Virus record (IMG/VR): IMGVR_UViG_3300037502_003770
Location: 124,001-188,000 of that record
Length of the DNA stretch: 64,000 nt
Reading direction: 5' to 3' (one strand)
In this document: piece by piece, positions 3,000 through 21,306 of the stretch
Layout: every line of letters starts with the position of its first letter
Position numbering within the stretch: position 1 is the stretch's first letter
The notes under the pieces: model-generated
Database searches by the model: none
Told to the model about the DNA's origin: nothing
Seen by the model: only the letters and a program-made list of their open reading frames with translations
Made by a program: the position numbers and the translations under genes

Positions 3000-3019
3000 T
3001 ACCTTAAATCAGTTAAACG

Positions 3020-5389: not shown

Positions 5390-5395
5390 CAGAAT

Positions 5396-5441: not shown

Positions 5442-5494
5442 TAATGTAATCAATCACAATCGAGTTCTAAACAACCCTTAACCTTAATCATAGT

Positions 5495-6495: not shown

Positions 6496-6584
6496 AACTT
6501 TTTGTTTTATTTTGAATATTAAAACCTACTTTCTTTGAAGGTAGGTTTTTTTAACTTTATAAATATTTTTTTGTATTATAAATA

Positions 6585-6905
6585 ATGGAAGGTATTAAAC
6601 TAAAAGTAATTAATGAAATTATTGACTTAATAATATCTTGTAATAGAGGTAAGATTTATCATTTTGATAAATCATTTTTAACATATAATAAAATTAATAA
6701 TATTTATATTGAACATAAAATTATTGCTTTCTTAACAGGTGAAAATATGATTCGTTTTTATGATAATGGTAGTTTAATAGCAAGTGCGATATATTTTAGA
6801 AAATCTAATCAAAATTTAATTATTTATTTAAGTAAATTTACTTTACTTGATTTACAGTATTTAAAATTAATAATGAAACAAGCAAAAAATAGACCTTTTC
6901 AATGA
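6585..6905 (+). CDS. LLDLQ-family paralogue
   Basis: IKLKVINEII ... FTLLDLQYLK. Confidence 0.75.
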   Translation: MEGIKLKVINEIIDLIISCNRGKIYHFDKSFLTYNKINNIYIEHKIIAFLTGENMIRFYDNGSLIASAIYFRKSNQNLIIYLSKFTLLDLQYLKLIMKQAKNRPFQ

Positions 6906-7261
6906 CAGATATTAAAACAAAACAAATAGACATATTCATAAAAAATATTGAACTTTTAAGAAAAAGTCAAGAAAGAAAATATTCCGTAATTACATTTGAA
7001 TTAGATAATATTTATTTTAAATTTAGAGGTGAGAACAGAAAAAATAAGAATATATTAAAGAGAATAACTTACAATTTAAAAACATATAAATATCGAATTA
7101 TATATGGTGATAAAAATTGTATAACAAGTGATTTAATTATAAAAAAAGACTTTTTCTATATATTAGAAAATCTTTCAGTATTAGATTTATTTTATGTAAA
7201 TAACTGTTTAAAACAGGCTTTAATTAAAAAATTTAATTTTTCTTATGAAACCCTTGCTTGA
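6902..7261 (+). CDS. LLDLQ-family paralogue
   Basis: IKTKQIDIFI ... LSVLDLFYVN. Confidence 0.7.
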   Translation: MTDIKTKQIDIFIKNIELLRKSQERKYSVITFELDNIYFKFRGENRKNKNILKRITYNLKTYKYRIIYGDKNCITSDLIIKKDFFYILENLSVLDLFYVNNCLKQALIKKFNFSYETLA

Positions 7262-7298
7262 CCTCCAATACATACATTTAAAATTAACACAAAGTTAA
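7245..7298 (+). CDS. 17 aa motif-only micropeptide or remnant of the LLDLQ family
   Basis: MKPLLDLQYIHLKLTQS*. Confidence 0.4.
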   Translation: MKPLLDLQYIHLKLTQS

Positions 7299-7356
7299 CA
7301 TTGAAAGCTTGACAAAGTGCAAAATTCTTTATACCTTTGTAATAGGTAATTAAACT

Positions 7357-7614
7357 ATGGAAGACTATAAATTTGAGCCGATAATGATAGGAATACATGA
7401 CCGAATGTATCATAATTTGCTTGTTTCTACAATTATCCCTGAAATATATTCTAGTAAATTACCGATATTTATTCCATCGCCACCTGAAAAGATAAAACCT
7501 AATATTCCAAAAATAAAGCTTTCTGATATACTTTACTATCCAAAAATAAGTATAAAAGAACTAGTCTTACCTTACCACAAAACAAGCGAATTTAAAAACT
7601 TCTTTTTAACATAA
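7357..7614 (+). CDS. hypothetical Pro-rich protein
   Basis: Follows host-type promoter 7309-7339. Confidence 0.65.
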   Translation: MEDYKFEPIMIGIHDRMYHNLLVSTIIPEIYSSKLPIFIPSPPEKIKPNIPKIKLSDILYYPKISIKELVLPYHKTSEFKNFFLT

Positions 7615-7657
7615 AGAAGTCTTTTTTTGTAATATAAGTAACTTTTATTTTTAATAT

Positions 7658-7960
7658 ATGATTATGTCTTTAAAAGAAAAGATAATTAATAAAATAATAT
7701 CTTACATAAATAAGGTTGATAATTACATAAGATTAGTTTACTATATACCTGATTATTGTTATGATGAAAATATTTTATTGAGAACAGAAATTTTTATTTC
7801 TTTAATAGATGAATTTAGCTATTATTATAGTTTGTATCGTACTGAAGATAATAGAGAATTTGAAATTACTTTAACATATAAAGAACTTATTTCTTTATTA
7901 AATAAACTTTCTTTGTTGGAACTACAATTTATTTTAATAAAAACAAATGAAAAAAACTAA
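7658..7960 (+). CDS. LLDLQ-family paralogue
   Basis: LKEKIINKII ... LSLLELQFIL. Confidence 0.75.
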   Translation: MIMSLKEKIINKIISYINKVDNYIRLVYYIPDYCYDENILLRTEIFISLIDEFSYYYSLYRTEDNREFEITLTYKELISLLNKLSLLELQFILIKTNEKN

Positions 7961-8249
7961 ATTTTCTTTAAAAAAAGAACTTTCTTTGAAAATATATAAA
8001 TCTCTTTTTTCTCTTTTCGATTGTCAGAAAGATTATGCTATTGAAATTTTAGTTTTTAGTAAATTCTATATAAAAAGAAATAAATTTAATAGTATAGTAC
8101 TTTCTGGTGATAAAAAATTTGGTTTTTCATCTTTTTGTTATTCGTTTGCATATAATGAAAAAAAACAATTTTTAGATTTTATGGTTAAAGAATTTCATTT
8201 ACTTGAATTACAAGTTATATTAAGAACAGTAAAAAAATACGTATGGTGA
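7947..8249 (+). CDS. LLDLQ-family paralogue
   Basis: LKKELSLKI ... FHLLELQVIL. Confidence 0.75.
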   Translation: MKKTKFSLKKELSLKIYKSLFSLFDCQKDYAIEILVFSKFYIKRNKFNSIVLSGDKKFGFSSFCYSFAYNEKKQFLDFMVKEFHLLELQVILRTVKKYVW

Positions 8250-8530
8250 AAAAAACTAAATCTTATCTTAAAAAACAACTTTCTTTGAAAATAATTACTA
8301 TTTTGAATAAATTATTTTTAACAACTTCATTTCCTAAATATGTTGGTTTTAAATCTTTTAAAAATTATATATCTATTACTTACATAAGATTTAATTATTT
8401 AAAAATTGATATTGGTAATAACACAAGATATATGAGTAAAACCGAATTTATTTATACATTTATGACTGAATTTTCTTTAATTGAACTTCAATATATAAAA
8501 AATTATGTTAAAATATATTTTTCTTTTTGA
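8243..8530 (+). CDS. LLDLQ-family paralogue
   Basis: LKKQLSLKI ... FSLIELQYIK. Confidence 0.75.
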   Translation: MVKKTKSYLKKQLSLKIITILNKLFLTTSFPKYVGFKSFKNYISITYIRFNYLKIDIGNNTRYMSKTEFIYTFMTEFSLIELQYIKNYVKIYFSF

Positions 8531-8903
8531 AATAAAAACTTTTCCAATTATAGATTTTAATAAAAGAAATATTGATATTTTAAAAAAATCTCTTACTAAA
8601 GAAATATTATCATCTTTAAAAAAAGGTATTAAATATAAGTTTGCGATTTCTTATGCTTTAATATTTATTTTAGAAGAAAGAATACTCAGGGAATATCCTA
8701 AGTATTTATATGGCTTATTTAATGGTATATACCCTCCATCTCAACCACCAATATTAGATGAACATGGAAAAGAAGAAAAATATTATAATGAAATTAATAC
8801 TTTAGAAACATTTAAAAAAGACTTTTTAATAAATCAATCATTACTTGATTTACAATTTATTTTGAAAATAATTAAACAAACAAATGAAAAACATCTTAAT
8901 TGA
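8505..8903 (+). CDS. LLDLQ-family paralogue
   Basis: LKKSLTKEIL ... QSLLDLQFIL. Confidence 0.75.
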   Translation: MLKYIFLFEIKTFPIIDFNKRNIDILKKSLTKEILSSLKKGIKYKFAISYALIFILEERILREYPKYLYGLFNGIYPPSQPPILDEHGKEEKYYNEINTLETFKKDFLINQSLLDLQFILKIIKQTNEKHLN

Positions 8904-9498
8904 AAAGATTAAATATCTTTTAGAAGTAATTAAACTTAAAGAAATAACTATTTCTAATTGTAATTTTGTTTTAGATTTTTATAATATAAGTGGTTTTGAT
9001 TATAGATGTCCAAAATGGTATGATTTTTTTAATCATAATTATTATAGAAAATCTAACCCTGTTCTTGAAATAAAAATATTTACATCAAAAAAAGAAGTAC
9101 GTTTTAGAATAAAAGATTTACCAAGTATTTTTCGTAATGAAGTAATTACTTGTTATGTTTCTTTTGAAGCATTTTACAAAATCATGGAAAATATGTCTTT
9201 ACTTGATTTACAATTTATTAAAAGAAATCTTTCCAAAATAAAAAATCAACAGATTAAAAAAGATAAAAATAAAATAGTTAACAATATTATAGAAAAAATT
9301 AAATCATATAAAACTTATTTTTGTGTAAATAATGTTTATAATTCAACATTTGAATTTTATGTAAATAAAATTACTGTATTATCAATATCTTTATACATAA
9401 ATGATATACCATATAATTTTAAAGAATTAAAATGGGAACTAAAGAGGTTTCCGTTGCTTGACCTCCAATACATTGATAAAAGATTAACAATTTCTTAA
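8884..9498 (+). CDS. LLDLQ-family paralogue, two fused units
   Basis: MSLLDLQFIK and FPLLDLQYID, each preceded by its own N-helix. Confidence 0.75.
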   Translation: MKNILIEKIKYLLEVIKLKEITISNCNFVLDFYNISGFDYRCPKWYDFFNHNYYRKSNPVLEIKIFTSKKEVRFRIKDLPSIFRNEVITCYVSFEAFYKIMENMSLLDLQFIKRNLSKIKNQQIKKDKNKIVNNIIEKIKSYKTYFCVNNVYNSTFEFYVNKITVLSISLYINDIPYNFKELKWELKRFPLLDLQYIDKRLTIS

Positions 9499-9578
9499 CA
9501 TTGCAGGTATTGACAAACCGAAAAATAGGTTGTACCTTTGTAATGTAATCAATCACGAACCCTTAAACACATACCGAA

Positions 9579-10046
9579 ATGGCAGTAGGAAAAACTTTTG
9601 TCGAAAGTTTAATACATGAACAAAAAGACCTCAGACATAAAATTATATATTCGATAATTGGATATATAAATGATTCACCTCAAAAAAGGATTGAATTTTA
9701 TGGTACAGACCATGATATTAGGTTGAATATTAATCACCCTAATTATACTTCAGCAGTTCACGTAAAATTGCTGGAAATCTCAATGAATCCTAACTATGTA
9801 GTTACTACTAACTTATTTAGTGATTTAGATACTGATAGATATGATTTAGCTGATATTCATCACATTGATAATATTTTATCATTTAAAGTTAAAACTTTAG
9901 ATGATTTAAATCATTATTTAGTTTCTGATGAAGAATTTAGTAATGATTGGGAGAATGAAGATTCACCTTTAAGTTTCAATGATATATTCACAGATGATTT
10001 AATGGAGATATTAAATCGTTTGAGTTTATTAAACGAAACAGAATAA
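9579..10046 (+). CDS. hypothetical acidic protein
   Basis: Follows host-type promoter 9510-9540; terminator at 10063. Confidence 0.75.
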   Translation: MAVGKTFVESLIHEQKDLRHKIIYSIIGYINDSPQKRIEFYGTDHDIRLNINHPNYTSAVHVKLLEISMNPNYVVTTNLFSDLDTDRYDLADIHHIDNILSFKVKTLDDLNHYLVSDEEFSNDWENEDSPLSFNDIFTDDLMEILNRLSLLNETE

Positions 10047-10062
10047 ATATCTCTTTCAAAAG

Positions 10063-10103
10063 AAAATCCCTTTAACAAATAAAGGGATTTTTTATAATAT
10101 AAA
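10063..10103 (+). terminator. terminator hairpin with embedded class II promoter
   Basis: AAAATCCCTTT-aacaaat-AAAGGGATTTT; TTAACA at 10072, N17, TAATATAA. Confidence 0.7.
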
Positions 10104-10112
10104 TAATATATC

Positions 10113-10556
10113 ATGAAAACAACACTTTCCGAAAGAAAAGAATTACTTATTAAAGAAATAATATCTTTAATAAAAAACTTTGATTATTCAAAAATACATA
10201 ATTCAAGATGGAAGGGTATTCATTTTGTTGAAATTGATTATAATTTATCCGAAAGAGATACGTTTAAAATAAAATTAAATGATTTATTTAATATTCGTTA
10301 TAATTATTTTGAAAGAGAATATTATTTATATTGTATTGAATGTAAAGAAGATTTTTCATTTTTCATGAAGGAAAATAAATATAGAGAAGAAAGAAAATAT
10401 AAAATTTGGTACTACACTATAGAACCATATAAATCTGGAGAAGAACATCATTCAACCACTCTAACAATAAGACAATTTAAAAAGTTATTTAATAAAATGT
10501 GTTTACTTGAGTTATTTAGTATTAAGTTAAAAATAAAAAAATTAGGAAGTAAATAA
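10113..10556 (+). CDS. LLDLQ-family paralogue
   Basis: RKELLIKEII ... MCLLELFSIK. Confidence 0.75.
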   Translation: MKTTLSERKELLIKEIISLIKNFDYSKIHNSRWKGIHFVEIDYNLSERDTFKIKLNDLFNIRYNYFEREYYLYCIECKEDFSFFMKENKYREERKYKIWYYTIEPYKSGEEHHSTTLTIRQFKKLFNKMCLLELFSIKLKIKKLGSK

Positions 10557-10563
10557 TTTTACA

Positions 10564-10926
10564 ATGAAAAAAACTTTAGTTAAAATAAAACTAATTTTGA
10601 AAATTCTATTCTCAAGAATGGATAATACAAAAAGATTTATTATTGTAAGAATTAAACCTTACGATAATAATGTTTTTATTGTTAATGAAATACATATTGT
10701 TGAGAATTATGGTCGACATAAAGAAAAATATTTTAGATTTAGATTAACTTGTACCGATAATAATTACGATGAAATTTATCGTACCAATAATAGATTTAGA
10801 ATGTTTCCATATTTATATGATTTATCATTATCAGATTTACAGTTTATTAAAAAAAATATTGAATATGCTTATAGTAAAGATTATCTATCACCTAAAATTA
10901 ATGATTTCTTAACATTGAAACCTTGA
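10564..10926 (+). CDS. LLDLQ-family paralogue
   Basis: VKIKLILKI ... LSLSDLQFIK. Confidence 0.75.
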   Translation: MKKTLVKIKLILKILFSRMDNTKRFIIVRIKPYDNNVFIVNEIHIVENYGRHKEKYFRFRLTCTDNNYDEIYRTNNRFRMFPYLYDLSLSDLQFIKKNIEYAYSKDYLSPKINDFLTLKP

Positions 10927-10988
10927 CATTCTCAAGTAGATGTATTACCTTTACAGAAGTAATACAACCACTCAAACCCTTAATTCGT

Positions 10989-11741
10989 ATGTTAACCACA
11001 ATTGCACAGCCAAGCTTCTTAAAACTAGATTCTGACCTATTCTTGCCAGTATTTTATGTTAGTACTGAAGCAAATCCTACATATATGGATTTTTATCCTG
11101 AAATAATTAATTTCTTTTCAAGAAAATTACTTTTCTCAAAAAAAGAATTATTAAATCATATTGATTATGAAGATAATTATAAACTTCATAATCAAGATAT
11201 TCCTTTAGATAATAAAGGTTTCAGGAAACTTATTCTGAAAGGAATAAGAGAAGCTAGGGAATTAGAATCATATCAAAATCATATTTTCTATATTCATTTG
11301 AGAATAAAAGATGAAAGTTTTGAACCGAATCCTATACCTCATAAATTGTATATTGAAAATTTTGGCAACGAAAATATTGGTAATCGTTATGAAGTAACCT
11401 TTAATTTAACTTATCAAGATAGAGATATTAGTGAAGATATTTCTATTGTAAGAGCAGCTTTTCATAATATTGAAAACAATGAAAGAGTTACTAAAATTAA
11501 AGTTGTTAAACACTTTGATTTACCAATTAAATCACAAAAGTTTTTAATTTCAACAGAAAATAAAAATACAGGTTTAGTTCTTTATGTAGCTGGTAGTGAT
11601 AAACATAAATTCTTTCACTCAAGCAGTATAGACCAAGCAAGAAGATATACTCAAAAAGAAATAGATAAATTTCTCGATAAAGATATTCACTTTAAAGAAA
11701 AGTTTACTATTACAAAAGATTTCAACTCAATAAAATTTTAA
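10989..11741 (+). CDS. hypothetical protein (start moved to ATG 10989)
   Basis: The track's TTG start at 10923 is the TTGACA of its own promoter. Confidence 0.7.
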   Translation: MLTTIAQPSFLKLDSDLFLPVFYVSTEANPTYMDFYPEIINFFSRKLLFSKKELLNHIDYEDNYKLHNQDIPLDNKGFRKLILKGIREARELESYQNHIFYIHLRIKDESFEPNPIPHKLYIENFGNENIGNRYEVTFNLTYQDRDISEDISIVRAAFHNIENNERVTKIKVVKHFDLPIKSQKFLISTENKNTGLVLYVAGSDKHKFFHSSSIDQARRYTQKEIDKFLDKDIHFKEKFTITKDFNSIKF

Positions 11742-11745
11742 CCTT

Positions 11746-11922
11746 ATGGCAGAATTCCCTGAACACTTAATTAAATGGTTTAATAAAATAGATAGAGAAA
11801 ATAAACTTCATATTGAAATGAAGAATAAAAAATATGTGTTGTATTTTAATCGAAAAGATAAAAAACTTCAACCGATAACTCAATTTATTAAACTAACCAA
11901 AAAACACAGACGTAAATACTAA
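11746..11922 (+). CDS. small basic protein (58 aa, not in track)
   Basis: MAEFPEHLIKWFNKIDRENK...HRRKY*; fills the gap in an operon. Confidence 0.55.
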   Translation: MAEFPEHLIKWFNKIDRENKLHIEMKNKKYVLYFNRKDKKLQPITQFIKLTKKHRRKY

Positions 11923-11940
11923 ACAAAACATCTTTCAAAC

Positions 11941-12390
11941 ATGAAAAAATTAAAAAAAGAACTAATCTCTTCTTTAAATAATGATTTTACTTTAAAGGTA
12001 GTAGATTTTCTACAAGATGATGTAAATAAGATTTCTTTTTTAAGAAATTCTTTAAACTTAGATAAACTTGAATCTTACAAGTTTTGCAATACCCATCGAG
12101 GTTTAACATTATCTTTTCAAAAAAGACTTAATGATTTACCGATGACAATTCATATTGGAGTTAAAAGAATAGGTAAACCAAAACAATATGAACCTAATAA
12201 TTTTCATTATGAATTGAGGATTTATCATCGACATTTACATTTTGAAGATGAAAGATTAATCGAAACTTGTAAAAGAATTAAACGTTCTAAACATAGTCCG
12301 TATCATTATTATACAGTAAAAAAGCACCCTTATCTTGGTGCAACTCTTGAATCTTCAATAGAACGATTCTTAACTGAGTTAATAAAGTAA
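11941..12390 (+). CDS. hypothetical protein
   Basis: 149 aa ORF before a terminator. Confidence 0.7.
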   Translation: MKKLKKELISSLNNDFTLKVVDFLQDDVNKISFLRNSLNLDKLESYKFCNTHRGLTLSFQKRLNDLPMTIHIGVKRIGKPKQYEPNNFHYELRIYHRHLHFEDERLIETCKRIKRSKHSPYHYYTVKKHPYLGATLESSIERFLTELIK

Positions 12391-12395
12391 AATAA

Positions 12396-12451
12396 TTCTT
12401 TCCTTAAAAACCTTTCATTCTTAACAAATGAAAGGTTTTTTTGTATATAAT
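12396..12451 (+). repeat. ~55 bp terminator/class II promoter unit, duplicated at 19482-19536
   Basis: TTCTTTCCTTAAAAACCTTTCATTCTTAACAAATGAAAGGTTTTTTTGTATATAA in both places. Confidence 0.85.
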
Positions 12452-12454
12452 AGT

Positions 12455-12742
12455 ATGGAGGAGGTAAGACTTAATTTAATAAAAGAAATTGTAGAAAAAA
12501 ATAAATTATGTTATGTTTCTAATTTAGATTTATTTTATTTTTACAATATTAAATATAAAAATTCTTTAGTTATTGATATTAATAATCGTATTAATGAAAT
12601 AAAAAATATTTTTTATTTTAATGATTATTTTAAATCTTTTGATGATGAAAAAAATAACTTTAATAATATAAAATTATATCAGATATTAGAAACATTACCT
12701 TTATTAAAATTACAATTTATTAACCATTGTCTTTATGAGTAA
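12455..12742 (+). CDS. LLDLQ-family paralogue (start moved to ATG 12455)
   Basis: VRLNLIKEIV ... LPLLKLQFIN; track start lies inside the terminator. Confidence 0.7.
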   Translation: MEEVRLNLIKEIVEKNKLCYVSNLDLFYFYNIKYKNSLVIDINNRINEIKNIFYFNDYFKSFDDEKNNFNNIKLYQILETLPLLKLQFINHCLYE

Positions 12743-13163
12743 AGAACAACTTAAAACTAAAGAAATAGATTTAATAATTGATTTCTTTCTGAAAGAAAAT
12801 AGAAAGCTAGATATTATTAATAGACATACAAGCGCAAGTGGTCATGAATTTAAAGTAAAAAATCCTTTTAATCATAATAAATCAAATATATATAAACATT
12901 TTCTTTTTTCAATTAAATCAAAAGAACTACCGTATGATTTTGATGAAAGAAATATAAATGGTTTTATTTTTACTAAATTTAAAACTAGAAAAATATTTGT
13001 GTTAGAAATATGTTTAGTTAATGATAAAAATGAAAATATTGGAATTGATGATTATAATTATATAGAACTAGAAGTAAAAAAATATTTAAAATCAATGAGT
13101 TTACTTGATTTACAGTTCATTAAAAATAAATCTTTAAATGAAAATAACCCCTTACAAAAATAA
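12735..13163 (+). CDS. LLDLQ-family paralogue
   Basis: MSLLDLQFIK. Confidence 0.75.
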   Translation: MSKEQLKTKEIDLIIDFFLKENRKLDIINRHTSASGHEFKVKNPFNHNKSNIYKHFLFSIKSKELPYDFDERNINGFIFTKFKTRKIFVLEICLVNDKNENIGIDDYNYIELEVKKYLKSMSLLDLQFIKNKSLNENNPLQK

Positions 13164-13530
13164 TAAATTTCTTTTAAAGAAAAGAATTGTCAATCAAATA
13201 GTAAAACTTCTTGATGTTGTTTCTTTTGATAATAGAAAAAATAATTATAATTTATGGTTTAAGAGTACTATTATAAATGTTGAAGCTAAATTTGATTATA
13301 TATTACTTAATTATGTAGTAAATACTTACTTAAATGAAAAAAAAGTTGAATATACTTTTGTTGTTGAAGGTAAAAATGGTCAGTTTTTTGGTATGGAAAA
13401 TTATAAATACGTTACAATTTCTCAACTGAAAAAAATATTTAATTCCTTTAGTTTACTCATGTTACAAAAAATAAAAACAATTCTTCAAAATAAAAAAATA
13501 CAATATGAAAAAACTTCTTACTTAAAGTAA
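13138..13530 (+). CDS. LLDLQ-family paralogue
   Basis: LKKRIVNQIV ... FSLLMLQKIK. Confidence 0.75.
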   Translation: MKITPYKNNKFLLKKRIVNQIVKLLDVVSFDNRKNNYNLWFKSTIINVEAKFDYILLNYVVNTYLNEKKVEYTFVVEGKNGQFFGMENYKYVTISQLKKIFNSFSLLMLQKIKTILQNKKIQYEKTSYLK

Positions 13531-13838
13531 AACTTATAATAGAAATAAATAATTCTATTCAAAAATTTAAATCTGTTAATTATAAACTTGATATATTATT
13601 AAATTCAAATATAAAAATATCTAAAATATATTATAATCATGATAATAGCAGGAAAAGGAAGTTTGAATTTTATTACTCATATAGAAATAATTATGAACAA
13701 AATATGTGTTATTCAAAATTTGATTTTTTAAATTTTTTATTTAAATTAAAATTACAAGATTTACAATACATTCATAATATAATTACATCTGAAAAAGATT
13801 TAAGTGATTTACGTATTCAATTAAGAAAATTATTATGA
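13505..13838 (+). pseudogene. LLDLQ-family paralogue with a +1 frameshift in an A6 run after ATG
   Basis: Removing one A gives MKNFLLKVKLIIEI...LKLQDLQYIH...RKLL*. Confidence 0.7.
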
Positions 13839-14236
13839 TAAAAAACCTCTTTCTTAAAGTAAAGGAATATTTTCTTAAAAAGAAATCAATTAAAGAAAAT
13901 ATAAAACTAAAAAATAAATTAGTTAAAGAAATAATAAACTTCTTAGATAAGTTTCAAGATATTAATTATTCAACTTTTGAAATTAAAATTAATGATAGAT
14001 TAACTATTACTAAATTAAAATTACAGTATAGTGGAATTACTGAAACAACAAAATATGATTTATTTTATACTGCTCTAAACAGTAAACAAGAAGAACATAA
14101 TTTAGATAAATATACATTTAAACGTTTTTTGTTTACTTTAAATTTATTAGATTTACAAAGGTTTCATAAACATATTTTAGATGTAGAAAATATTTATTAT
14201 CATAAAGTTAAATTTAATAGATTGCTTGATATATGA
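13835..14236 (+). CDS. LLDLQ-family paralogue
   Basis: LKNKLVKEII ... LNLLDLQRFH. Confidence 0.75.
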   Translation: MIKNLFLKVKEYFLKKKSIKENIKLKNKLVKEIINFLDKFQDINYSTFEIKINDRLTITKLKLQYSGITETTKYDLFYTALNSKQEEHNLDKYTFKRFLFTLNLLDLQRFHKHILDVENIYYHKVKFNRLLDI

Positions 14237-14592
14237 AAAAACTTTTTATTAAAGTAAGACTGATTTATCAAATAGTCATTTCTCAAAGTGAAAGCTTTAA
14301 GAAAAATAATATCTGTTTAAATGAAGAAGATTATTCTTTTGCAAGTAAAAAACTAATTGAAACAAGGTATTTAAATAGATTTAATAATCCCTCATTTTAT
14401 GGTGGAATTCAAACATTTACTATACATAAATTTACAGGTGCTTTAAAACCTTTAATATTAGTTACACATGAAAAGAATATTGGTTCAAGTGATTATATTA
14501 CAATTTTTAAATTCTTATTAAAATTAAATATTTTAACCTTACAAAAAATAAAAATGGTTTTAAAAAATGTTACAGAAACAAAAACTAATTGA
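14233..14592 (+). CDS. LLDLQ-family paralogue
   Basis: IKVRLIYQIV ... LNILTLQKIK. Confidence 0.7.
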   Translation: MKKLFIKVRLIYQIVISQSESFKKNNICLNEEDYSFASKKLIETRYLNRFNNPSFYGGIQTFTIHKFTGALKPLILVTHEKNIGSSDYITIFKFLLKLNILTLQKIKMVLKNVTETKTN

Positions 14593-14857
14593 AGAAATAT
14601 ATTATTATTCAATATATAATGAAGATGTGATTGAACTTAATTTTAAATTTAATAATTTTGTATTATATAAAATTGAAGATAGAAAACTTCATTATCATAA
14701 AGAAACAAAGATTCATTCATTATTTTATTTTGAAATAAATAACTATCTTTATCTTAAAGATATACCTACTTTGACTATGTTCTTTAGCGAAAATAAAATC
14801 TCTTTACTTGATTTACAGTTTTTAACAAATAAAATTAGAAATAATGCAAACAATTAA
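14567..14857 (+). CDS. LLDLQ-family paralogue
   Basis: QKQKLIEEIY ... ISLLDLQFLT. Confidence 0.75.
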   Translation: MLQKQKLIEEIYYYSIYNEDVIELNFKFNNFVLYKIEDRKLHYHKETKIHSLFYFEINNYLYLKDIPTLTMFFSENKISLLDLQFLTNKIRNNANN

Positions 14858-15152
14858 AGAAAATTTTATTGAACAAATTGAATCCATTCTTTTAGAAAAG
14901 AATATTTCTCATTATAATAATTTATATAATATTTATATTAATAATTATTCTTCAAAAATATTAGAAATAGGTGTTCATTCCAGTAAATATATATTTGTTA
15001 TGTATTCTTTAAATGAAAATACAGATGAAGATACTAATATTAATAGTTTTGATGTTCAATTTTCTTTTGATAAAAATTTTTTATTAAACATTAACCTTCT
15101 TGATTTACAATATATTAAAAATAAATTATGTACATACAGCAATCACCATTAG
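14844..15152 (+). CDS. LLDLQ-family paralogue
   Basis: IKENFIEQIE ... INLLDLQYIK. Confidence 0.75.
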   Translation: MQTIKENFIEQIESILLEKNISHYNNLYNIYINNYSSKILEIGVHSSKYIFVMYSLNENTDEDTNINSFDVQFSFDKNFLLNINLLDLQYIKNKLCTYSNHH

Positions 15153-15469
15153 AAAAACTAAAATTAAAACTTATTGAAGAAATCTATCAAAAGATATTAT
15201 TTATATTAAATAATACTTCTAAGACTGTAAATTTTATTATTTTTAATTATGTTTTTAATAAAAAAACAATTAAAGGTGAATTTAAAACTATTCAATTAAC
15301 CAAAAATTGTATTGTTTTTTTATCACCATTAGGATATATTAAACATACTTCTGATATAAAACTTACTAAAAATTCATTTATTAAACTAAATTTATCTCTT
15401 CTTGAACTACAATATATTAAAATAAATATGAACTCGAGTCTAATCAATCCCGACTTTTGTAATTATTAA
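15128..15469 (+). CDS. LLDLQ-family paralogue
   Basis: LKLKLIEEIY ... LSLLELQYIK. Confidence 0.75.
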   Translation: MYIQQSPLEKLKLKLIEEIYQKILFILNNTSKTVNFIIFNYVFNKKTIKGEFKTIQLTKNCIVFLSPLGYIKHTSDIKLTKNSFIKLNLSLLELQYIKINMNSSLINPDFCNY

Positions 15470-15513
15470 AAAATAACCATCTTTAACAAAAGATATGGTT
15501 TTTTGTATTATAT

Positions 15514-15801
15514 ATGATGAATGAAATAAAAGAAAGCTTAATAAATAGAATTATATTAGAAGGTAAATTATATCATGCAGATACAGGTCATTTCGCTCTT
15601 AATATATTTTATTTTTATAATAAAAAAATTAAAATGTCAATTATTATTAACCCTAGTAAATATATTAATAATAAACCGTACATTTATACATACAATCATA
15701 ATTATCATTTTATGACAGAAATTCATAATGAAAAATTATATAAACTATTAAAACAATTACCTTTATTAGATTTACAATTTATCTTGTACTTTATTTTATG
15801 A
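15514..15801 (+). CDS. LLDLQ-family paralogue
   Basis: IKESLINRII ... LPLLDLQFIL. Confidence 0.75.
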   Translation: MMNEIKESLINRIILEGKLYHADTGHFALNIFYFYNKKIKMSIIINPSKYINNKPYIYTYNHNYHFMTEIHNEKLYKLLKQLPLLDLQFILYFIL

Positions 15802-16214
15802 AAGAAAACTTAATTAAAGAAATAATTGATAACCTTAGTTCAATAAAAGAATATTTTAATATAGGAAACGTAGATACAGTTATTAGAAGTATTTTATTTG
15901 AAAATAAAATCTTTTTTTCAAAAAAGAAATACTTTGATTATATAGAACTTGAATTTGGGGATGGCGTATATTCACATAATTTATTAGAGATAAGGTTTGG
16001 TGAACGTGAATCAAAATATGGTTTTTATATACATAAAGAAATTTATTTCTTAAATCCAAATAAAGTAAATAAATTTTTTAATAAACTAACAATTCTTCAA
16101 TTACAATCATTTCTTATTGAAATAAAACATTTTATTAAATATAATGAGTATTCAATTTATCGCTCTAAATATAGAAAAACAGGAAGAAAAACAAAAGCGA
16201 TTACATATTATTAA
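15798..16214 (+). CDS. LLDLQ-family paralogue
   Basis: MKENLIKEII ... LTILQLQSFL. Confidence 0.75.
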   Translation: MKENLIKEIIDNLSSIKEYFNIGNVDTVIRSILFENKIFFSKKKYFDYIELEFGDGVYSHNLLEIRFGERESKYGFYIHKEIYFLNPNKVNKFFNKLTILQLQSFLIEIKHFIKYNEYSIYRSKYRKTGRKTKAITYY

Positions 16215-16518
16215 AAAGCAGTTAATTAAAAAAATAAAGAAATCTATTTTTAAAAGTAAAACCGTTGACCCTTCAGTTATTATTATTTCAAATAAAATAT
16301 CTTTATTAAGAAATAAAGATTTAACATATTTTAATATGCTTTCAATAGAAAGAAATATTTCAAATAAAATAACTTATATTAATTTTTTTAAATGGTTAAA
16401 TGATAATAGTTTAATTAGAATAACATATCTAAAATATCCAAGTTTAAATTATTTTCTTAATAAATTAACGATTCTTCAATTACAATCAATTCTAATAAAT
16501 TTAAAAAATGATGACTAA
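16144..16518 (+). CDS. LLDLQ-family paralogue
   Basis: IKKQLIKKIK ... LTILQLQSIL. Confidence 0.75.
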   Translation: MSIQFIALNIEKQEEKQKRLHIIKKQLIKKIKKSIFKSKTVDPSVIIISNKISLLRNKDLTYFNMLSIERNISNKITYINFFKWLNDNSLIRITYLKYPSLNYFLNKLTILQLQSILINLKNDD

Positions 16519-16819
16519 AGAAGAACTAAAAACTAAACTTATTTTAGATATTTATTATAATTTAAGATGTTGCTATGATTTTCATTTAAATTCAATTTGT
16601 TTATATAATAATATTAATTATAAAGGTGTTAATTTTAATAAATTGTTTTTAACAGTTAGAGAAGATATTAAATTAAAATATACTACTTATGAACATGATT
16701 ATACAATTAGTGAGATATATAATAAATGTATTTTCTTCAATGAACTAACAATACTTCAATTACAATTGATTTTAGTACATTTTAAACGAGTGGTCAATGA
16801 AAGAAGAGATAAAAAATAA
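16508..16819 (+). CDS. LLDLQ-family paralogue
   Basis: LKTKLILDIY ... LTILQLQLIL. Confidence 0.75.
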   Translation: MMTKEELKTKLILDIYYNLRCCYDFHLNSICLYNNINYKGVNFNKLFLTVREDIKLKYTTYEHDYTISEIYNKCIFFNELTILQLQLILVHFKRVVNERRDKK

Positions 16820-17183
16820 CATTATCAATAAAATAATGTATATAATAGAAAAAGTATATCTTTATTCAAAAGGAAATGATTATATAAATATTCCTTTAAA
16901 TAAAAATCATTTTATTTCTATCAATAATAAAATTTTTAACCATATTATTATAGACCCTGAAGACTTTGAAATATTATTGGTGAACATATTTGACGGTTTA
17001 TACAAAACAAAACGTAATGAAGTTATTCTTAAATCCAATTACTCAACATTTAATGAACATTTATTTAAACAATTTACTTTACTCCAGTTACAATACATAT
17101 TAATTGATTTAATTTCAAAAGAAAATAATCCTTCATTATTAAAAAATAGAATCAATCAGATATGGGAAAAGTATCCACAATAA
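16797..17183 (+). CDS. LLDLQ-family paralogue
   Basis: IKNNIINKIM ... FTLLQLQYIL. Confidence 0.75.
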   Translation: MKEEIKNNIINKIMYIIEKVYLYSKGNDYINIPLNKNHFISINNKIFNHIIIDPEDFEILLVNIFDGLYKTKRNEVILKSNYSTFNEHLFKQFTLLQLQYILIDLISKENNPSLLKNRINQIWEKYPQ

Positions 17184-17653
17184 AGAAAAATTTAATAAAA
17201 GAAGTTATAATTAAGGAAGCAACTTATTTTGTTGAAGAATTTTTATTAAAAAGAAAAATAAAAAAATTTAGTTTTATTAGAAATCATGAATTACTTTTAA
17301 ATTGTAAAAATTTTAAAAGTAAGTTAATTGGTGCTTATGATTATTCATATAACTTTTGTGAATACATACCTAAATATAATAAAACTTTATATTATTTAGA
17401 TGATATAAATATTAATTATTCTCATCGTAATCTTGGTGATATTTTTGAAGTTAAATTAAGATGTTTACCTTTTAATATAAAACATTTCTCTAATGATAGA
17501 TTTAATATGGATAAAGACACCTTTATAGAATTATTATCCACAACAAAAAATTTATTATATTTACAATATATAAATAAGAAAATACAAAGTATCGAACAAA
17601 ATTCTAATTTAATTAATAAACATTATGAGTCTGAGTTCTATTTTAATTGGTAA
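17162..17653 (+). CDS. LLDLQ-family paralogue
   Basis: IKKNLIKEVI ... KNLLYLQYIN. Confidence 0.75.
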   Translation: MGKVSTIKKNLIKEVIIKEATYFVEEFLLKRKIKKFSFIRNHELLLNCKNFKSKLIGAYDYSYNFCEYIPKYNKTLYYLDDININYSHRNLGDIFEVKLRCLPFNIKHFSNDRFNMDKDTFIELLSTTKNLLYLQYINKKIQSIEQNSNLINKHYESEFYFNW

Positions 17654-18000
17654 TAAAAATGATTTTAATTTCTATTCTTAAAATAAAAACTATTTTTCTA
17701 ATAATATATCTTTTATTAAAGAAAAATATTCATACTTACTTTAAAGTAATTAAAATAAATAAAGAATACACATATAGATATATTATTATAGGTAATTTTT
17801 ATTTTGTTAAAAATATTATTTACCTTACTAGAGAAGAATTTTTAAGTATAAAATTTTTGCCTATATTATTTAGTTTACCCTTATCTGATTTACATTATAT
17901 AAAAATTAAATTATCATTAGAAAAACCATATAAAGTAAAAAATTTACCAACAAATAAAACAGTCACCTTTATTCAAGGAAGACGCTTTTTTGCAAAATAG
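17647..18000 (+). CDS. LLDLQ-family paralogue (ATG at 17659 is an alternative start)
   Basis: LPLSDLHYIK. Confidence 0.7.
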   Translation: MVIKMILISILKIKTIFLIIYLLLKKNIHTYFKVIKINKEYTYRYIIIGNFYFVKNIIYLTREEFLSIKFLPILFSLPLSDLHYIKIKLSLEKPYKVKNLPTNKTVTFIQGRRFFAK

Positions 18001-18098
18001 ACCATTTCTTAACAAAAAGATAACATTGTAGGTATTGACAAATCCAAAAATAGGTCGTATCTTTGTAAGGTATTCAGAAACAACCTTAACCGAGCCTT

Positions 18099-18164
18099 AT
18101 GCTAAAAGGAAGAACAATAACCAAAGAAAGATTCAATCTTATTGAAGAAATTATTGAATTATAA
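18099..18164 (+). pseudogene. 5' fragment of an early gene interrupted by the TnpB insertion
   Basis: Host-type promoter 18035-18065, then MLKGRTITKERFNLIEEIIEL* ending where an A/T-only stretch begins; possible 3' remainder at ~19410-19475. Confidence 0.45.
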
Positions 18165-19410
18165 TAAATTATATAATATTTATATTAATAATTATTTTTT
18201 ACTATTTAATAATATACATTTAAATTAATGAAATTAATTCACAAAGGTTATAAATATAGAATCTACCCAAATAAAGAACAAACTGAATTGTTAAATAAAC
18301 ATTTTGGTTCTTGTAGATTTGTATTTAATTATTTCCTTAATTTAAAAATGAATACCTATAAACAAGAAAAGAAAAATCTAAATAATAATTATCTATCTTC
18401 ATTATTAACCCTTCTTAAAAAAGAACAGAATTATTCTTGGTTAAATGAAATTAATTCTCAAAGTTTGCAAGCTTCTTTAAAAAATGTTGACGTTGCTTAT
18501 GATAGGTTTTTTAAAAAGATAAGTCAATATCCAAAATTTAAAAGTAAAAATGATAAACAAAGTTTTAAAGTACCACAGTTTTTAACTATTGAAAATGATT
18601 TATTATATTTGCCTAAATTTAAGAAAGGAATTAAAATAAATATTCATAGAGATTTTAAAGGAAAGATTTTATATGGAACTGTATCAAAAACACCAACAGG
18701 TAAATATTATGTATCTATCACTTGTAAACAAGAATATATTCCTTTTGAAAAGACAGGTTCTATTATAGGAATTGATACTGGTATTAAAGATTTAGCTATC
18801 CTTTCAGATAAAACTGTTTATGAAAATAAAAAGGTTTTAAAGAAGAGGATAAAGAAAATAAAATATAAACAAAGGCAATTAAGTAAGAAAGTAAAAGGTA
18901 GCAAGAGTAGGATAAAACAAAGGAATAAACTTGCAATAGAACATGAGAAAGTAGTAAATATTAGAAAAGATTATTTACATAAAGTAAGTACAGAAATTAT
19001 CAAAAACCACGATATTATATGTATTGAAGACCTTTCAATAAAAAACATGATGAAGAACCATAAATTAGCGCAAGCATTTTCTGATGCAAGTTTAGGTACA
19101 TTCTATGATATGTTAGAATATAAAGCTTCTTTTAATGAGAAGAAAATTATTAAGATAGGAAGATTTTTTGCAAGTAGTAAAACTTGTTCAAAATGTAATT
19201 ATATTAATGAGGAATTAACATTAAAGGATAGGGAATGGACTTGCAAAGGTTGTGGCACGTTGCATGATAGAGATTATAATGCAAGTATAAATATTAAAAA
19301 CGAAGGTTTAAAGATATTATCTGGTTTGGGTTGCAAGTCGGATATAAAACAAAAAGTGATGGAGGCGTTTCCGTTAGGAGAGTCAATGAAATCATATATT
19401 TAGAAATAAA
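18165..19410 (+). mobile_element. IS200/IS605-family element, solo TnpB (IS1341-like), boundaries approximate
   Basis: TnpB ORF without TnpA, interrupting a promoter-gene-terminator unit. Confidence 0.65.
18228..19403 (+). CDS. tnpB: RNA-guided endonuclease TnpB
   Basis: HTH_OrfB start YKYRIYPNKEQ..FGSCRFVFN; RuvC-I GIDTG, RuvC-II IEDL, zinc finger CSKC/CKGC, RuvC-III HDRDYNASINI. Confidence 0.95.
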   Translation: MKLIHKGYKYRIYPNKEQTELLNKHFGSCRFVFNYFLNLKMNTYKQEKKNLNNNYLSSLLTLLKKEQNYSWLNEINSQSLQASLKNVDVAYDRFFKKISQYPKFKSKNDKQSFKVPQFLTIENDLLYLPKFKKGIKINIHRDFKGKILYGTVSKTPTGKYYVSITCKQEYIPFEKTGSIIGIDTGIKDLAILSDKTVYENKKVLKKRIKKIKYKQRQLSKKVKGSKSRIKQRNKLAIEHEKVVNIRKDYLHKVSTEIIKNHDIICIEDLSIKNMMKNHKLAQAFSDASLGTFYDMLEYKASFNEKKIIKIGRFFASSKTCSKCNYINEELTLKDREWTCKGCGTLHDRDYNASINIKNEGLKILSGLGCKSDIKQKVMEAFPLGESMKSYI

Positions 19411-19542
19411 TACAACATGGAGAAAATCCTGATTTTAATATCAATAAAATAAGCCTTGAATTGAACCCTCAATAAAACAATTTCTTTCCTTAAAAACCTT
19501 TCATTCTTAACAAATGAAAGGTTTTTTTGTATATAAAATAGT

Positions 19543-19788
19543 ATGGTAAAGGAAAAATCCGATTTATTGAAAGAAAATCTTATTAAAGAAATAATATTGA
19601 TTAAGTCCGAATCTGAATCAAAAAATATTCCGTCAGGTTCTATTTTAAAACTTATTATTTTTTATAATCCAACTTATAATTTAACTGTTATAAAATTTAA
19701 AAATAAAAGTATTAAAATTATTAAAAATAAATTATTTACATATAATTATGGTCATAGTAGTTCAATACATAAAACAATCTATCATTAA
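19543..19788 (+). CDS. LLDLQ-family paralogue, probably deleted or frameshifted near the C-terminus
   Basis: LKENLIKEII present; C-motif missing in frame but VVQYIK...* appears in another frame at ~19757-19813. Confidence 0.55.
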   Translation: MVKEKSDLLKENLIKEIILIKSESESKNIPSGSILKLIIFYNPTYNLTVIKFKNKSIKIIKNKLFTYNYGHSSSIHKTIYH

Positions 19789-19812
19789 AGAAAATAAACT
19801 TTTGAATTCGTA

Positions 19813-20136
19813 ATGAAAGAAAATCTTATTGAAAAAATATTTTCCCTTGAATGGAAAATACCTAAAAATAATTATGTATATCTTAATAAAGGAAATTTTC
19901 GTTCAAACAAATATTCACTAAATGCAATAAAAATAGAAAATAAAGAAATACTCATACACTATAAAAATAAATATTATGATATATATTTTTATGATGAAGT
20001 AACAACATTAGAAAAAAAGAATGTTCTTAAATCTTTATCTATTTTAGATTTACAATTTATTTTTCTATTTCTAAATTCAGAAAAAAATCAAAAACCTATT
20101 AATATGAAATTAAATTTTGATTCCATACCTAGATAA
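19813..20136 (+). CDS. LLDLQ-family paralogue
   Basis: MKENLIEKIF ... LSILDLQFIF. Confidence 0.8.
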   Translation: MKENLIEKIFSLEWKIPKNNYVYLNKGNFRSNKYSLNAIKIENKEILIHYKNKYYDIYFYDEVTTLEKKNVLKSLSILDLQFIFLFLNSEKNQKPINMKLNFDSIPR

Positions 20137-20147
20137 AATATATTCTT

Positions 20148-20453
20148 ATGAAAGAAAAATTAATTCAAGAAATATTGAATCTTGTTAAAAATACAAGAAA
20201 AGATTTTATTAACGATATTACTAACCCTTTTATCACTAATATCTATTATATAGACCCTGTATATGGCACTCGTAAAATATATTTAATGGATATAGTTGAT
20301 ATAGATATATACCAAATTATTACTGTAAAAAATTTAAATCTAGGTGATGATTATCGTAGTATAATTAATAAAACAGAAATAATAAGAATATTAAACCTTG
20401 TTTCATTATTAGACCTGCAATATATTCTATTATTATTAAAAAAATTTTTATGA
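20148..20453 (+). CDS. LLDLQ-family paralogue
   Basis: MKEKLIQEIL ... VSLLDLQYIL. Confidence 0.8.
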   Translation: MKEKLIQEILNLVKNTRKDFINDITNPFITNIYYIDPVYGTRKIYLMDIVDIDIYQIITVKNLNLGDDYRSIINKTEIIRILNLVSLLDLQYILLLLKKFL

Positions 20454-20752
20454 AAGAAATACTCCTTAAAGAAATAACCTCACTCCTTAAAGAAAAAGAT
20501 TTTACTTTAAAAAGTAACAATTATTATACTATTAATCTAAACCTTAAAAAAATACAAAATAAAGAATATTATTATTTCCTAAGAAATATACATTATAATA
20601 AAAATAATAATTCCTATATTCTAACATACAGTTTTAAAAATCAAACTCATCTAACAGATGATTATATCACACTTAAAAATAAAAATATAACCAAATATAT
20701 AAAACATATTTCCCTTCTTGATTTGCAATTTATAAAATTATCTCTTTTATGA
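20450..20752 (+). CDS. LLDLQ-family paralogue
   Basis: MKEILLKEIT ... ISLLDLQFIK. Confidence 0.8.
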   Translation: MKEILLKEITSLLKEKDFTLKSNNYYTINLNLKKIQNKEYYYFLRNIHYNKNNNSYILTYSFKNQTHLTDDYITLKNKNITKYIKHISLLDLQFIKLSLL

Positions 20753-21295: not shown

Positions 21296-21306
21296 AACTT
21301 AATTAT

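What the first reader, a model, noticed from the sequence alone, without database searches (positions are those of the whole stretch)
7596..19537. Terminator-promoter fusions: the -35 box sits in the terminator loop
At 7596-7637, 10063-10103, 12408-12451, 15473-15513 and 19494-19537, TTAACA lies in or at the loop of an intrinsic terminator. The 3' stem and U-tract form the 17-18 bp spacer, and the -10-like box follows the U-tract. One ~45 bp element therefore stops the upstream transcript and starts the LLDLQ run. In four of the five cases the pattern is host promoter, unrelated gene(s), fused element, LLDLQ run.
Basis: partly seen in the sequence, partly recalled or inferred. Interest (0 to 1): 0.65.

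Follow-up and report, generated by a model that had tools for sequence, protein, structure and literature searches.

The report
Combined terminator-promoter cassettes in jumbo phage
In a 313-kb T4-like phage genome from groundwater, about a dozen short intergenic elements nest a promoter's -35 box in the loop of a terminator hairpin; they look real and probably work, but they belong to an already described kind, the PeSL promoter/stem-loop cassettes of T4-type phages.

Summary
All five sites have a hairpin with TTAACA in or at the loop, then a T-run, then TAATAT, TATTAT or TATATA at 17-18 nt.

The pattern is not special to the LLDLQ genes. The window lies in a 312,694-bp, 22% GC T4-like jumbo phage that carries a Gp23-type capsid gene and a tail sheath. 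A promoter class, P1 (TTAACA-N17-TAWTAT with a T-rich spacer ending in G), occurs about 40 times, almost only on the coding strand.
- 13 copies are fused: the hairpin loop centre lies within 0 to +2.5 nt of the -35 centre.
- 8-9 have a terminator abutting the -35.
- The rest have no hairpin.

At least five unrelated stem sequences keep pairing, with z -4.5 to -8.2 for 11 of the 13. In relatives with about 72-88% identity the elements are kept. One is 43/43 identical and another 57/57, while the genes between them are swapped, with breakpoints inside the cassettes.

This matches PeSLs (Arbiol 2010; Comeau 2014), one subclass of which has the stem-loop over the -35. No RNA data exist, so termination and initiation are inferred.

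Which sigma factor reads P1 is open.

The parts
7594..7635 (+). Fused element 1. Hairpin 7598-7620 with TTAACA (7606-7611) in the loop, T-run 7622-7628, TAATAT 7630-7635. The stop codon of ORF 7357-7614 lies in the loop. It precedes LLDLQ run 7658-9498.
   Evidence: -6.6 kcal/mol, weak. A 91%-identical copy lies in relative L022:5781-5822 in another gene context.
10057..10107 (+). Fused element 2. 14-bp hairpin, TTAACA 10072-10077, 17-nt spacer, TAATAT 10095-10100. It precedes LLDLQ run 10113-10926.
   Evidence: -15.0 kcal/mol, z -5.3. 43/43 identical in L022 and L025 and 46/47 in L024, while the upstream gene is 80-87% identical.
12396..12452 (+). Fused element 3. 57-nt cassette with hairpin 12406-12440, TTAACA 12421-12426, T-run 12436-12442, TATATA 12444-12449. 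The likely true start codon is at 12455. It precedes LLDLQ run 12455-15469.
   Evidence: 100% identical to L022:9078-9134. Direct repeat of element 5.
15471..15511 (+). Fused element 4. Bulged hairpin, TTAACA 15483-15488, TATTAT 15506-15511. It sits between two LLDLQ genes, and ATG codons follow 3 and 6 nt after the -10.
   Evidence: -6.4 kcal/mol, weak.
19482..19537 (+). Fused element 5. Copy of element 3, TTAACA 19507-19512, TATATA 19530-19535. It follows TnpB and precedes LLDLQ run 19543-23078.
6521..6579 (+). Tandem (not nested) version. 13-bp terminator 6521-6549, then TTAACT 6551-6556, 17 nt, TATTAT 6574-6579. The ATG of the first LLDLQ gene is at 6585.
   Evidence: -14.4 kcal/mol. Member of the terminator family with covariation.
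4925..4985 (+). Tandem terminator plus P1 promoter (TTAACA 4957-4962, TAATAT 4980-4985) before ORF 5012-5389.
   Evidence: The orthologous terminator in L022 keeps pairing through double changes (A:U to U:A, C:G to G:C), read from the sequences.
5382..5459 (+). Boxes TAACATTG, TTGACA-N17-TACCTTTG. Further copies at 2925-3015, 7280-7353, 9478-9566, 10894-10980 and 18005-18091.
   Evidence: families D6, D7.
6585..23078 (+). About 35 small paralogous genes of roughly 80-200 aa. They share an N-terminal K-x-L-I-x-E-I motif and a C-terminal SLLDLQ[FY]I motif and lie in six runs that the cassettes start. Within runs the genes abut or overlap.
   Evidence: No Pfam or PHROG hit.
18228..19403 (+). TnpB (IS605 OrfB-type) gene between a P2 copy and fused element 5.
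   Evidence: PF01385, PF07282, PF12323. Absent at this place in relative L022.

Best explanation
These are composite regulatory cassettes of a T4-like jumbo phage: an intrinsic terminator and a sigma-70-type promoter written into the same roughly 45-60 bp.

How the sequence is built:
- The promoter class (P1) has a quasi-palindromic core, T-run, TTAACA, A-run, and a T-rich spacer ending in G just before TAWTAT.
- Adding a complementary arm upstream of the -35 turns the spacer into the 3' arm and U-tract of a hairpin.

Inferred working:
1. RNA polymerase coming from the upstream gene transcribes the hairpin and U-tract and terminates within the spacer.
2. A new transcript starts about 7 nt after the -10, so it does not contain the hairpin.
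3. Each gene or gene run is therefore insulated and expressed from its own promoter.
4. At sites 1, 2, 3 and 5 the element separates genes driven by a different promoter class (P2) from the LLDLQ runs.

The cassettes, conserved over about 60-100 bp including the leader, also serve as homology for recombination that swaps the genes between them, as proposed for PeSLs.

Shown: sequence architecture, non-random pairing, strand and position bias, conservation, and shuffling breakpoints. Inferred: termination, initiation, timing, and which sigma factor acts.
For: Genome identity:
- A virus record of 312,694 bp with a Gp23 capsid match at E 2e-59.
- It also has a tail sheath, PolB and an Mre11/Rad50-like protein.

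P1 as a promoter:
- 57 strict matches on the + strand against 17 on the - strand and about 11-28 per strand by chance.
- The weight-matrix scan gives 39 against 1.
- Matches lie 3-54 nt before ORF starts.
- The T-rich spacer and the G are also present in 18 hairpin-free copies: T in 10-16 of 18 and G in 11 of 18.

Architecture classes: 13 fused, with the loop centre 0 to +2.5 nt from the -35 centre; 8-9 tandem, with the stem ending 1-9 nt before the -35; the rest without a hairpin.

Pairing is non-random:
- z -4.5 to -8.2 for 11 fused sites.
- Tool folds of -13.7 to -15.0 kcal/mol.
- Stems differ completely between families, as the alignment shows.
- A G:C to U:A double change and U:G wobbles occur within the main family.
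- The terminator family used in tandem copies is 100% paired, with 7 of 13 pairs compensatory and 0 of 500 shuffles as good.

Negative control: 0 of 53 chance matches elsewhere has a hairpin.

Conservation in relatives:
- Element 2 is 43/43 identical while the flanking gene is 80-81% identical.
- Element 3 is 57/57 identical in another gene context.
- The fused element downstream of the Bax1-I gene is kept in three lineages, with wobble-compatible changes.

Shuffling:
- Homology of the relatives to this genome runs only from inside the upstream element (108669) to the end of the downstream element's leader (109556), and the flanking genes differ.
- LLDLQ genes 6585-9498 are replaced in L022.
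- 62-nt direct repeats flank a 7.1-kb block.

Precedent: PeSLs were shown to act as promoters and terminators in lacZ fusions, and one subclass has the stem-loop over the -35 (PMC2839356; PMC4122927).
Against: - No RNA run holds this sequence, so no 5' or 3' ends are known.
- Hairpins 1 and 4 are weak, at about -6.5 kcal/mol and z about -2.
- Stems are AT-rich with 2-4 G:C pairs.
- In the minimum-energy folds the upstream A-run pairs with part of the U-tract, which could lower termination efficiency.
- The hairpin is dispensable for the promoter. At the orthologous place upstream of the Bax1-I gene, relatives have the promoter without it.
- The host is unknown. The near absence of Shine-Dalgarno sites, TTG/TAnnTTTG-type sites and the nearest TnpB relatives hint at Bacteroidota. 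The primary sigma factor of that phylum is not known to use a TTAACA/TAATAT-type promoter (my own knowledge of Bacteroides promoter studies, not checked here).
- Many copies are paralogues, so counts overstate independence.
Confidence: 0.7

Rival explanations
1. The promoter is real, but the hairpin is not a terminator. It could be a 3'-end stabiliser or processing site for the upstream mRNA. It could also act at the DNA level, as a cruciform or as a palindromic operator over the -35 that tunes promoter activity.
For: - The inverted repeat is centred on the -35 within about 1 nt in most copies, which is where a regulator or cruciform would matter.
- The A-run and T-run extend the stem and eat into the free U-tract.
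Against: - Arm sequences differ completely between families, so there is no common operator half-site.
- Every fused copy is followed by 5-8 T, as are the stand-alone terminators of the same genome, whose stems covary.
- The tandem copies place an ordinary terminator at the same boundary, which argues that termination is what is needed there.
Confidence: 0.12
2. The terminator is real, but TTAACA...TAWTAT is not a promoter. On this view the conserved boxes are part of a repeated terminator and leader cassette spread by duplication, and the LLDLQ runs are transcribed from farther upstream.
For: - Many copies are clearly paralogous over 60-100 bp, including the leader.
- In several cases the start codon lies only 3-7 nt after the '-10'. 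That would require leaderless mRNA.
- A TTAACA box also opens the P2 repeat, where no -10 follows at 17 nt.
Against: - The fixed 17 (16-18) nt spacing of two hexamers holds across copies whose spacers are otherwise unrelated.
- The strand bias is strong: 39 against 1.
- 18 hairpin-free copies sit directly before genes.
- If the hairpin terminates, the downstream runs need a new start.
- The only change in the element in relative L024 converts TAATAT to TATTAT, the other allowed -10 form.
Confidence: 0.08
3. The hairpins are ends or target sites of the IS200/IS605-type element, or a MITE-like selfish repeat, with no role in transcription.
For: - Element 5 lies 79 nt after the TnpB stop codon.
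- IS605-family ends are hairpins (my own knowledge).
- The elements are repeated and are found at rearrangement breakpoints.
Against: - Twelve of thirteen copies have no TnpB nearby.
- The identical copy at 12396 and the one in L022 have no IS next to them.
- No TnpA gene was seen among the window ORFs I scanned (and others); I did not search the whole genome for one.
- All copies point the same way as the genes and sit exactly between a stop codon and a start codon.
Confidence: 0.03

Closest known systems
PeSLs (promoter-early stem-loops), the composite promoter-terminator cassettes of T4-type phages (Arbiol et al. 2010, PMC2839356; Comeau et al. 2014, PMC4122927)
   Same: - A T4-type genome, shown by the Gp23 capsid match.
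- A bipartite -35/N17/-10 promoter joined to a stem-loop, sitting between a stop codon and the next start codon.
- Conservation over about 60-100 bp.
- Concentration in ORFan-rich variable regions.
- Both nested and upstream placements of the stem-loop occur. The 2010 paper lists five placements, including overlap with the -35; in PST the stem-loop lies just upstream.
- Gene swaps between relatives have breakpoints in the cassettes, and direct repeats flank gene blocks.
   Different: - A very distant lineage: PolB is only 24% identical to any isolate, GC is 22%, and the source is a subsurface metagenome.
- The -35 consensus is TTAACA, not TTGACA, TTTACW or TTGYVH.
- Stems are AT-rich and followed by a true U-tract, which is at the same time the conserved T-rich promoter spacer. 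The PeSL paper does not mention a T- or U-rich tract in a word search.
- The nesting is register-locked, with the loop centre on the -35 centre.
- There is no Shine-Dalgarno box at the 3' end.
- Activity, timing and mini-circles are untested here. The promoter may not be 'early' or host-sigma dependent.
Canonical intrinsic (Rho-independent) terminators
   Same: A stem-loop of 8-16 bp with a loop of 3-7 nt, followed by 5-8 T. The energies equal those of the stand-alone terminators of the same genome, -10 to -19 kcal/mol.
   Different: The loop and 3' arm are also promoter sequence. There are few G:C pairs. An upstream A-run gives a bidirectional look.
T4 early promoters ('uber' UP/-35/TGn/-10 promoters with extra conserved positions; Hinton 2010, PMC2988021)
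   Same: They are many, strong-looking and highly similar to each other. Conservation goes beyond the two hexamers: a T-run before the -35, TG before the -10, and a conserved start region.
   Different: The TG abuts the -10 hexamer directly instead of TGn. Whether host RNA polymerase alone reads them is unknown.

Membership tests
PeSL | Sigma-70-type promoter with -35 and -10 boxes about 17 bp apart | tested here: met
   TTAACA-N17(16-18)-TAWTAT. Enriched, strand-specific and placed before genes. Sequence evidence only.
PeSL | Stable stem-loop adjacent to or overlapping the promoter | tested here: met
   13 nested over the -35 and 8-9 directly upstream.
PeSL | The stem-loop terminates or attenuates transcription, and the cassette drives transcription (shown by lacZ fusions in the original work) | not testable with these tools
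   No RNA run holds the sequence. Only covariation and the U-tract support it.
PeSL | Resides in a T4-type phage genome, concentrated in variable ORFan-rich regions | tested here: met
   Gp23 match at E 2e-59. Fused copies lie at 68-144 kb among small genes without family hits.
PeSL | Associated with insertions, deletions or replacements between close relatives, with crossover points inside the cassette | tested here: met
   L022, L079 and L081 compared with this genome. A 7.1-kb block is flanked by 62-nt direct repeats.
PeSL | Promoter is 'early', read by unmodified host RNA polymerase | not testable with these tools
   Host unknown. Hints of a Bacteroidota-type host leave this open.
PeSL | Shine-Dalgarno box at the 3' end of the cassette | tested here: not met
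   Only 4 of 435 ORFs have an SD-like 4-mer. This is a host-dependent trait, not one that defines the mechanism.
PeSL | Formation of mini-circles by recombination between neighbouring cassettes | not tested
   Only contigs were available. The joints seen there are too short-sided to interpret.
Intrinsic terminator | Hairpin immediately followed by a U-tract, with pairing kept by compensatory change | tested here: met
   For the fused copies, compensation is seen mainly between families and only weakly within the main family (19 of 500 shuffles as good).
IS200/IS605 end hairpin | Hairpin at the end of an element that carries tnpA and/or tnpB | tested here: not met
   Only 1 of 13 copies is near TnpB, and identical copies lack it.

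The most novel reading that the evidence does not exclude
The fused elements may be class-switch insulators in a sigma cascade of a Bacteroidota-infecting T4-like phage.
1. Host-type promoters (P2, TTG-N19/20-TAnnTTTG) drive a few early genes. One of these is a sigma-like protein (window 3020-4267).
2. The nested terminator stops those transcripts exactly on top of a second promoter class (P1). Only a phage-directed polymerase reads P1, so the LLDLQ arrays are kept silent until then.

The overlap places the terminating polymerase on the next promoter, with the U-tract at about -20 to -13. That could allow direct re-initiation without leaving the DNA.
Probability: 0.15. Interest if true: 0.6.

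Novelty: new member of a known kind. Interest (0 to 1): 0.38.

Why it matters
- It extends composite promoter-terminator cassettes, and the gene shuffling linked to them, from cultured T4-type coliphages and vibriophages to a deeply divergent, uncultured 313-kb phage. This suggests the design is an old and general feature of T4-like genome organisation.
- The copies here are an unusually clean case of dual coding. One T-run serves as both terminator U-tract and promoter spacer, and one hexamer serves as both hairpin loop and -35. They are therefore useful as compact natural insulator parts, and for asking how termination and initiation interact at zero distance.
- The three clear promoter classes give a ready map of the transcription programme of a phage whose host is unknown.

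Tried and rejected
- **RNA evidence.** No RNA run holds the region.
- **Relatives in IMG/VR.** The LLDLQ alignment was too variable to search with. An exact element pattern found none.
- **Promoter-anchored pattern.** It gave 7 viral and 46 metagenome hits, all unrelated chance matches. I used them only as a negative control.
- **Rfam.** Nothing found.
- **Which sigma factor reads P1.**
  - Window 3020-4267 has only a weak PHROG sigma hit. It has no Pfam hit and no PDB hit.
  - The exhaustive protein search found only its orthologue, and the AlphaFold model was unusable, pLDDT 43.
  - A 150-aa ORF at genome 49196-49648 has four weak colinear sigma signals, but its model was also unusable, pLDDT 39.5.
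  - No fold search was run on either model.
- **One consensus structure for all 13 fused hairpins.** This was not possible because their registers differ by up to 2.5 nt. The formal count was made only on the main family and is weak.
- **IS605-end and operator readings.** Rejected, as set out under the rival explanations.
- **My terminator-centred table.** It undercounts fused copies, because the extended stems swallow the T-tail. I did not use it for proportions.

Full report
**What the window is.** The window is positions 124001-188000 of a single 312,694-bp contig with 22% GC and six tRNA genes. The tools class it as a virus record, about 96% complete.
- It encodes a T4-type major capsid protein (Pfam Gp23, E 2e-59).
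- It also encodes a tail sheath, a family-B DNA polymerase, an Mre11/Rad50-like protein and a lytic transglycosylase.
- The nearest isolates share only 24% identity in the polymerase.
- The DNA comes from a subsurface metagenome. Two other aquatic metagenomes hold related strains, and no RNA run holds it.

It is therefore a deeply divergent, uncultured T4-like jumbo phage.

**The observation.**
- Three hairpins are strong, at -13.7 to -15.0 kcal/mol and z about -5.5.
- Two are weak, at 7596 and 15473, with about -6.5 kcal/mol and z about -2.2.
- Sites 3 and 5 are two copies of one 62-nt repeat 7,086 bp apart.

**It is a genome-wide promoter class.** I call the promoter P1. It is a T-run, TTAACA, an A-rich then T-rich 17-nt spacer ending in G, TAWTAT, and a conserved start region.
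- Strict matches number 57 on the + strand. That compares with 17 on the - strand and about 11-28 per strand in simulated sequence.
- A two-block weight matrix finds 39 on the + strand and 1 on the - strand.
- Matches lie 3-54 nt before ORF starts, mostly at 80-145 kb among small genes without family matches.

Classified by promoter:

| Class | Number | Geometry |
|---|---|---|
| Fused | 13 | hairpin wrapped around the -35, loop centre 0 to +2.5 nt from the hexamer centre |
| Tandem | 8-9 | ordinary terminator whose stem ends 1-9 nt before the -35 |
| Bare | the rest | no hairpin |

The fused copies have their -35 at genome 68198, 98917, 108652, 109492, 113488, 115078, 115572 and 115960, and at window 7606, 10072, 12421, 15483 and 19507. 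So the fused form is one end of a series, and it is not specific to LLDLQ genes. It also precedes a Bax1-I-type membrane protein, a lipoprotein and other ORFans.

**Is the hairpin selected?**
- Shuffling only the 20 nt upstream of the -35, the arm that is not promoter, gives z -4.5 to -8.2 for 11 of the 13, with no shuffle as good. It gives z -2.4 for the two weak ones.
- The arms of the different families share no sequence, yet all pair (alignment).
- Within the main family there is one G:C to U:A double change and there are U:G wobbles. The formal statistic is weak because the copies are close paralogues.
- The 13-bp terminator family used in the tandem copies and elsewhere is paired in 100% of cells. 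It has compensatory changes at 7 of 13 pairs, and 0 of 500 shuffles do as well.
- As a negative control, 53 chance matches to the P1 pattern in unrelated viral and metagenome contigs have no hairpin better than -4.3 kcal/mol.
- The T-rich spacer and the G are also present in 18 hairpin-free P1 copies. The T-run is therefore a promoter feature that the hairpin copies reuse as a U-tract.

**Relatives.** Contigs from other samples carry orthologues of neighbouring genes.
- At site 2 the element is 43/43 identical in two relatives whose upstream gene is 80-81% identical at the DNA level.
- In a third relative site 2 is 46/47 identical. The single change turns TAATAT into TATTAT, the other usual -10 form.
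- The 57-nt element of site 3 is 100% identical in L022, although the genes around it differ. A copy of the site-1 type sits in yet another context there.
- Downstream of the Bax1-I gene all three lineages keep a fused element, with changes that preserve pairing. Upstream of it the relatives have the promoter without the hairpin.
- Homology between those relatives and this genome begins inside the upstream element's spacer (108669) and ends at the end of the downstream element's leader (109556). The flanking genes are different, and one has its homologue 6 kb away.
- In L022 the nine LLDLQ genes at 6585-9498 are replaced by other genes between conserved cassettes.

**Comparison with what is known.** This is the behaviour described for PeSLs. 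These are small cassettes of T4-type phages that combine a sigma-70-like early promoter with a stem-loop.
- The stem-loop was shown to terminate transcription in lacZ fusions.
- The cassettes are concentrated in hyperplastic ORFan regions.
- They have five placements of the stem-loop, including overlap with the -35.
- They mediate modular shuffling and mini-circle formation (PMC2839356; PMC4122927).

The present elements meet the sequence-level and comparative criteria. Activity, timing and mini-circles could not be tested.

Differences from PeSLs:
- the distant lineage;
- the TTAACA -35;
- AT-rich stems with a genuine U-tract that doubles as the conserved spacer;
- the register-locked nesting;
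- the absence of a Shine-Dalgarno box.

**Mechanism I consider most likely (inferred).** Transcripts from the upstream gene end in the T-run. A new transcript that lacks the hairpin starts a few nt after the TAWTAT. This insulates each gene or run. At sites 1, 2, 3 and 5 the upstream gene is driven by another repeated cassette, P2, so the fused element separates two promoter classes.

**An open question about the host and the polymerase.**
- Only 4 of 435 ORFs have a Shine-Dalgarno-like 4-mer, which is less than in random sequence.
- P2, and several otherwise unrelated upstream regions at 127-156 kb, share TTG-N19/20-TA(T/C)CTTTG. There are ten such sites before genes, against 1-4 in simulations. 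From my own knowledge, not checked in the papers here, this is the Bacteroidota primary-sigma consensus.
- The nearest TnpB relatives, at 68-70% identity, are on contigs binned as Bacteroidales, Flavobacteriales and Sphingobacteriales. One is binned as Sedimentibacter.
- A third class, taCTATTTA, lies mostly 12-25 nt before start codons. It has 65 sites on both strands, including before the capsid and sheath genes, and it looks like the late promoter.

If the host is a Bacteroidota member, P2 would be the host-type class and P1 might depend on a phage factor. Two weak sigma-like ORFs exist, but neither could be confirmed. This does not affect the architecture, but it does affect the label 'early'.

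**Verdict.** I rate it a new member of a known kind, of moderate interest.

Noticed in passing
window 6585-23078: About 35 tandem paralogues of roughly 80-200 aa. They share an N-terminal K-x-L-I-x-E-I helix and a C-terminal SLLDLQ[FY]I motif. No Pfam or PHROG match. Gene number and content differ between related strains.
   Followed up: partly
window 2925-3015, 5382-5459, 7280-7353, 9478-9566, 10894-10980, 18005-18091; also 24167, 24982, 26389, 29486, 31856: A second promoter class, P2. It is a roughly 90-nt repeat with invariant TAACATTG, TTGACA and TACCTTTG boxes. More generally, TTG-N19/20-TAnnTTTG sites lie before genes, which fits the Bacteroidota promoter consensus. The copy at 2960 precedes the sigma-like ORF 3020-4267 and overlaps a P1-like TTAACA-N17-TAGTAT.
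   Followed up: partly
e.g. window 32804, 34320, 34926, 37209, 47004, 52428, 53989, 55813, 58926, 61035; genome-wide 65 sites: A third motif, taCTATTTA(a/t)a, lies mostly 12-25 nt before start codons on both strands, including before the Gp23 capsid and tail sheath genes. It is probably the late promoter, the counterpart of T4's TATAAATA.
   Followed up: partly
whole genome: Shine-Dalgarno sequences are almost absent: 4 of 435 ORFs, against 5.5% of random 15-mers. Leaders are A-rich.
   Followed up: partly
window 6579-6585, 12449-12455, 15511-15517, 19535-19543; L022:5822-5826: The first gene of several LLDLQ runs starts only 3-7 nt after the -10 box, which implies leaderless or near-leaderless mRNAs. 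The listed ORF 12428-12742 probably starts at 12455 instead.
   Followed up: no
window 18228-19403: A TnpB (IS605 OrfB) gene with no TnpA next to it in the window. It is absent at this place in relative L022, and a homologue sits at another place in relative L024. The nearest relatives, at 68-70% identity, are on Bacteroidota-binned contigs.
   Followed up: partly
window 23237-24083: An array of about ten roughly 55-nt repeats with the core CTA(T/C)AG(T/C)ACTTTTTTT, lying between the last LLDLQ gene and ORF 24237, in a stretch of strongly negative GC skew. Function unknown.
   Followed up: no
window 3020-4267; genome 49196-49648 (L003:14196-14648): Two ORFs have weak similarity to phage sigma factors (phrog_1740). 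The 150-aa one also has weak Sigma70 r2 and r4_2 hits, and it lies next to the primase and after the Mre11/Rad50-like gene. Neither could be confirmed.
   Followed up: partly
genome 108713-109459 (L007:3713-4459): A Bax1-I / FtsH-binding membrane protein gene forms a single-gene cassette between two fused elements. It is 88% identical in relatives, where both neighbouring genes differ.
   Followed up: yes
window 58880-58930 (genome about 182880-182930); genome 197202-197260 and 199812-199870: Terminator hairpins are also followed directly by the late-type CTATTTA motif. Close terminator-promoter coupling is therefore general in this compact genome and not limited to P1.
   Followed up: no
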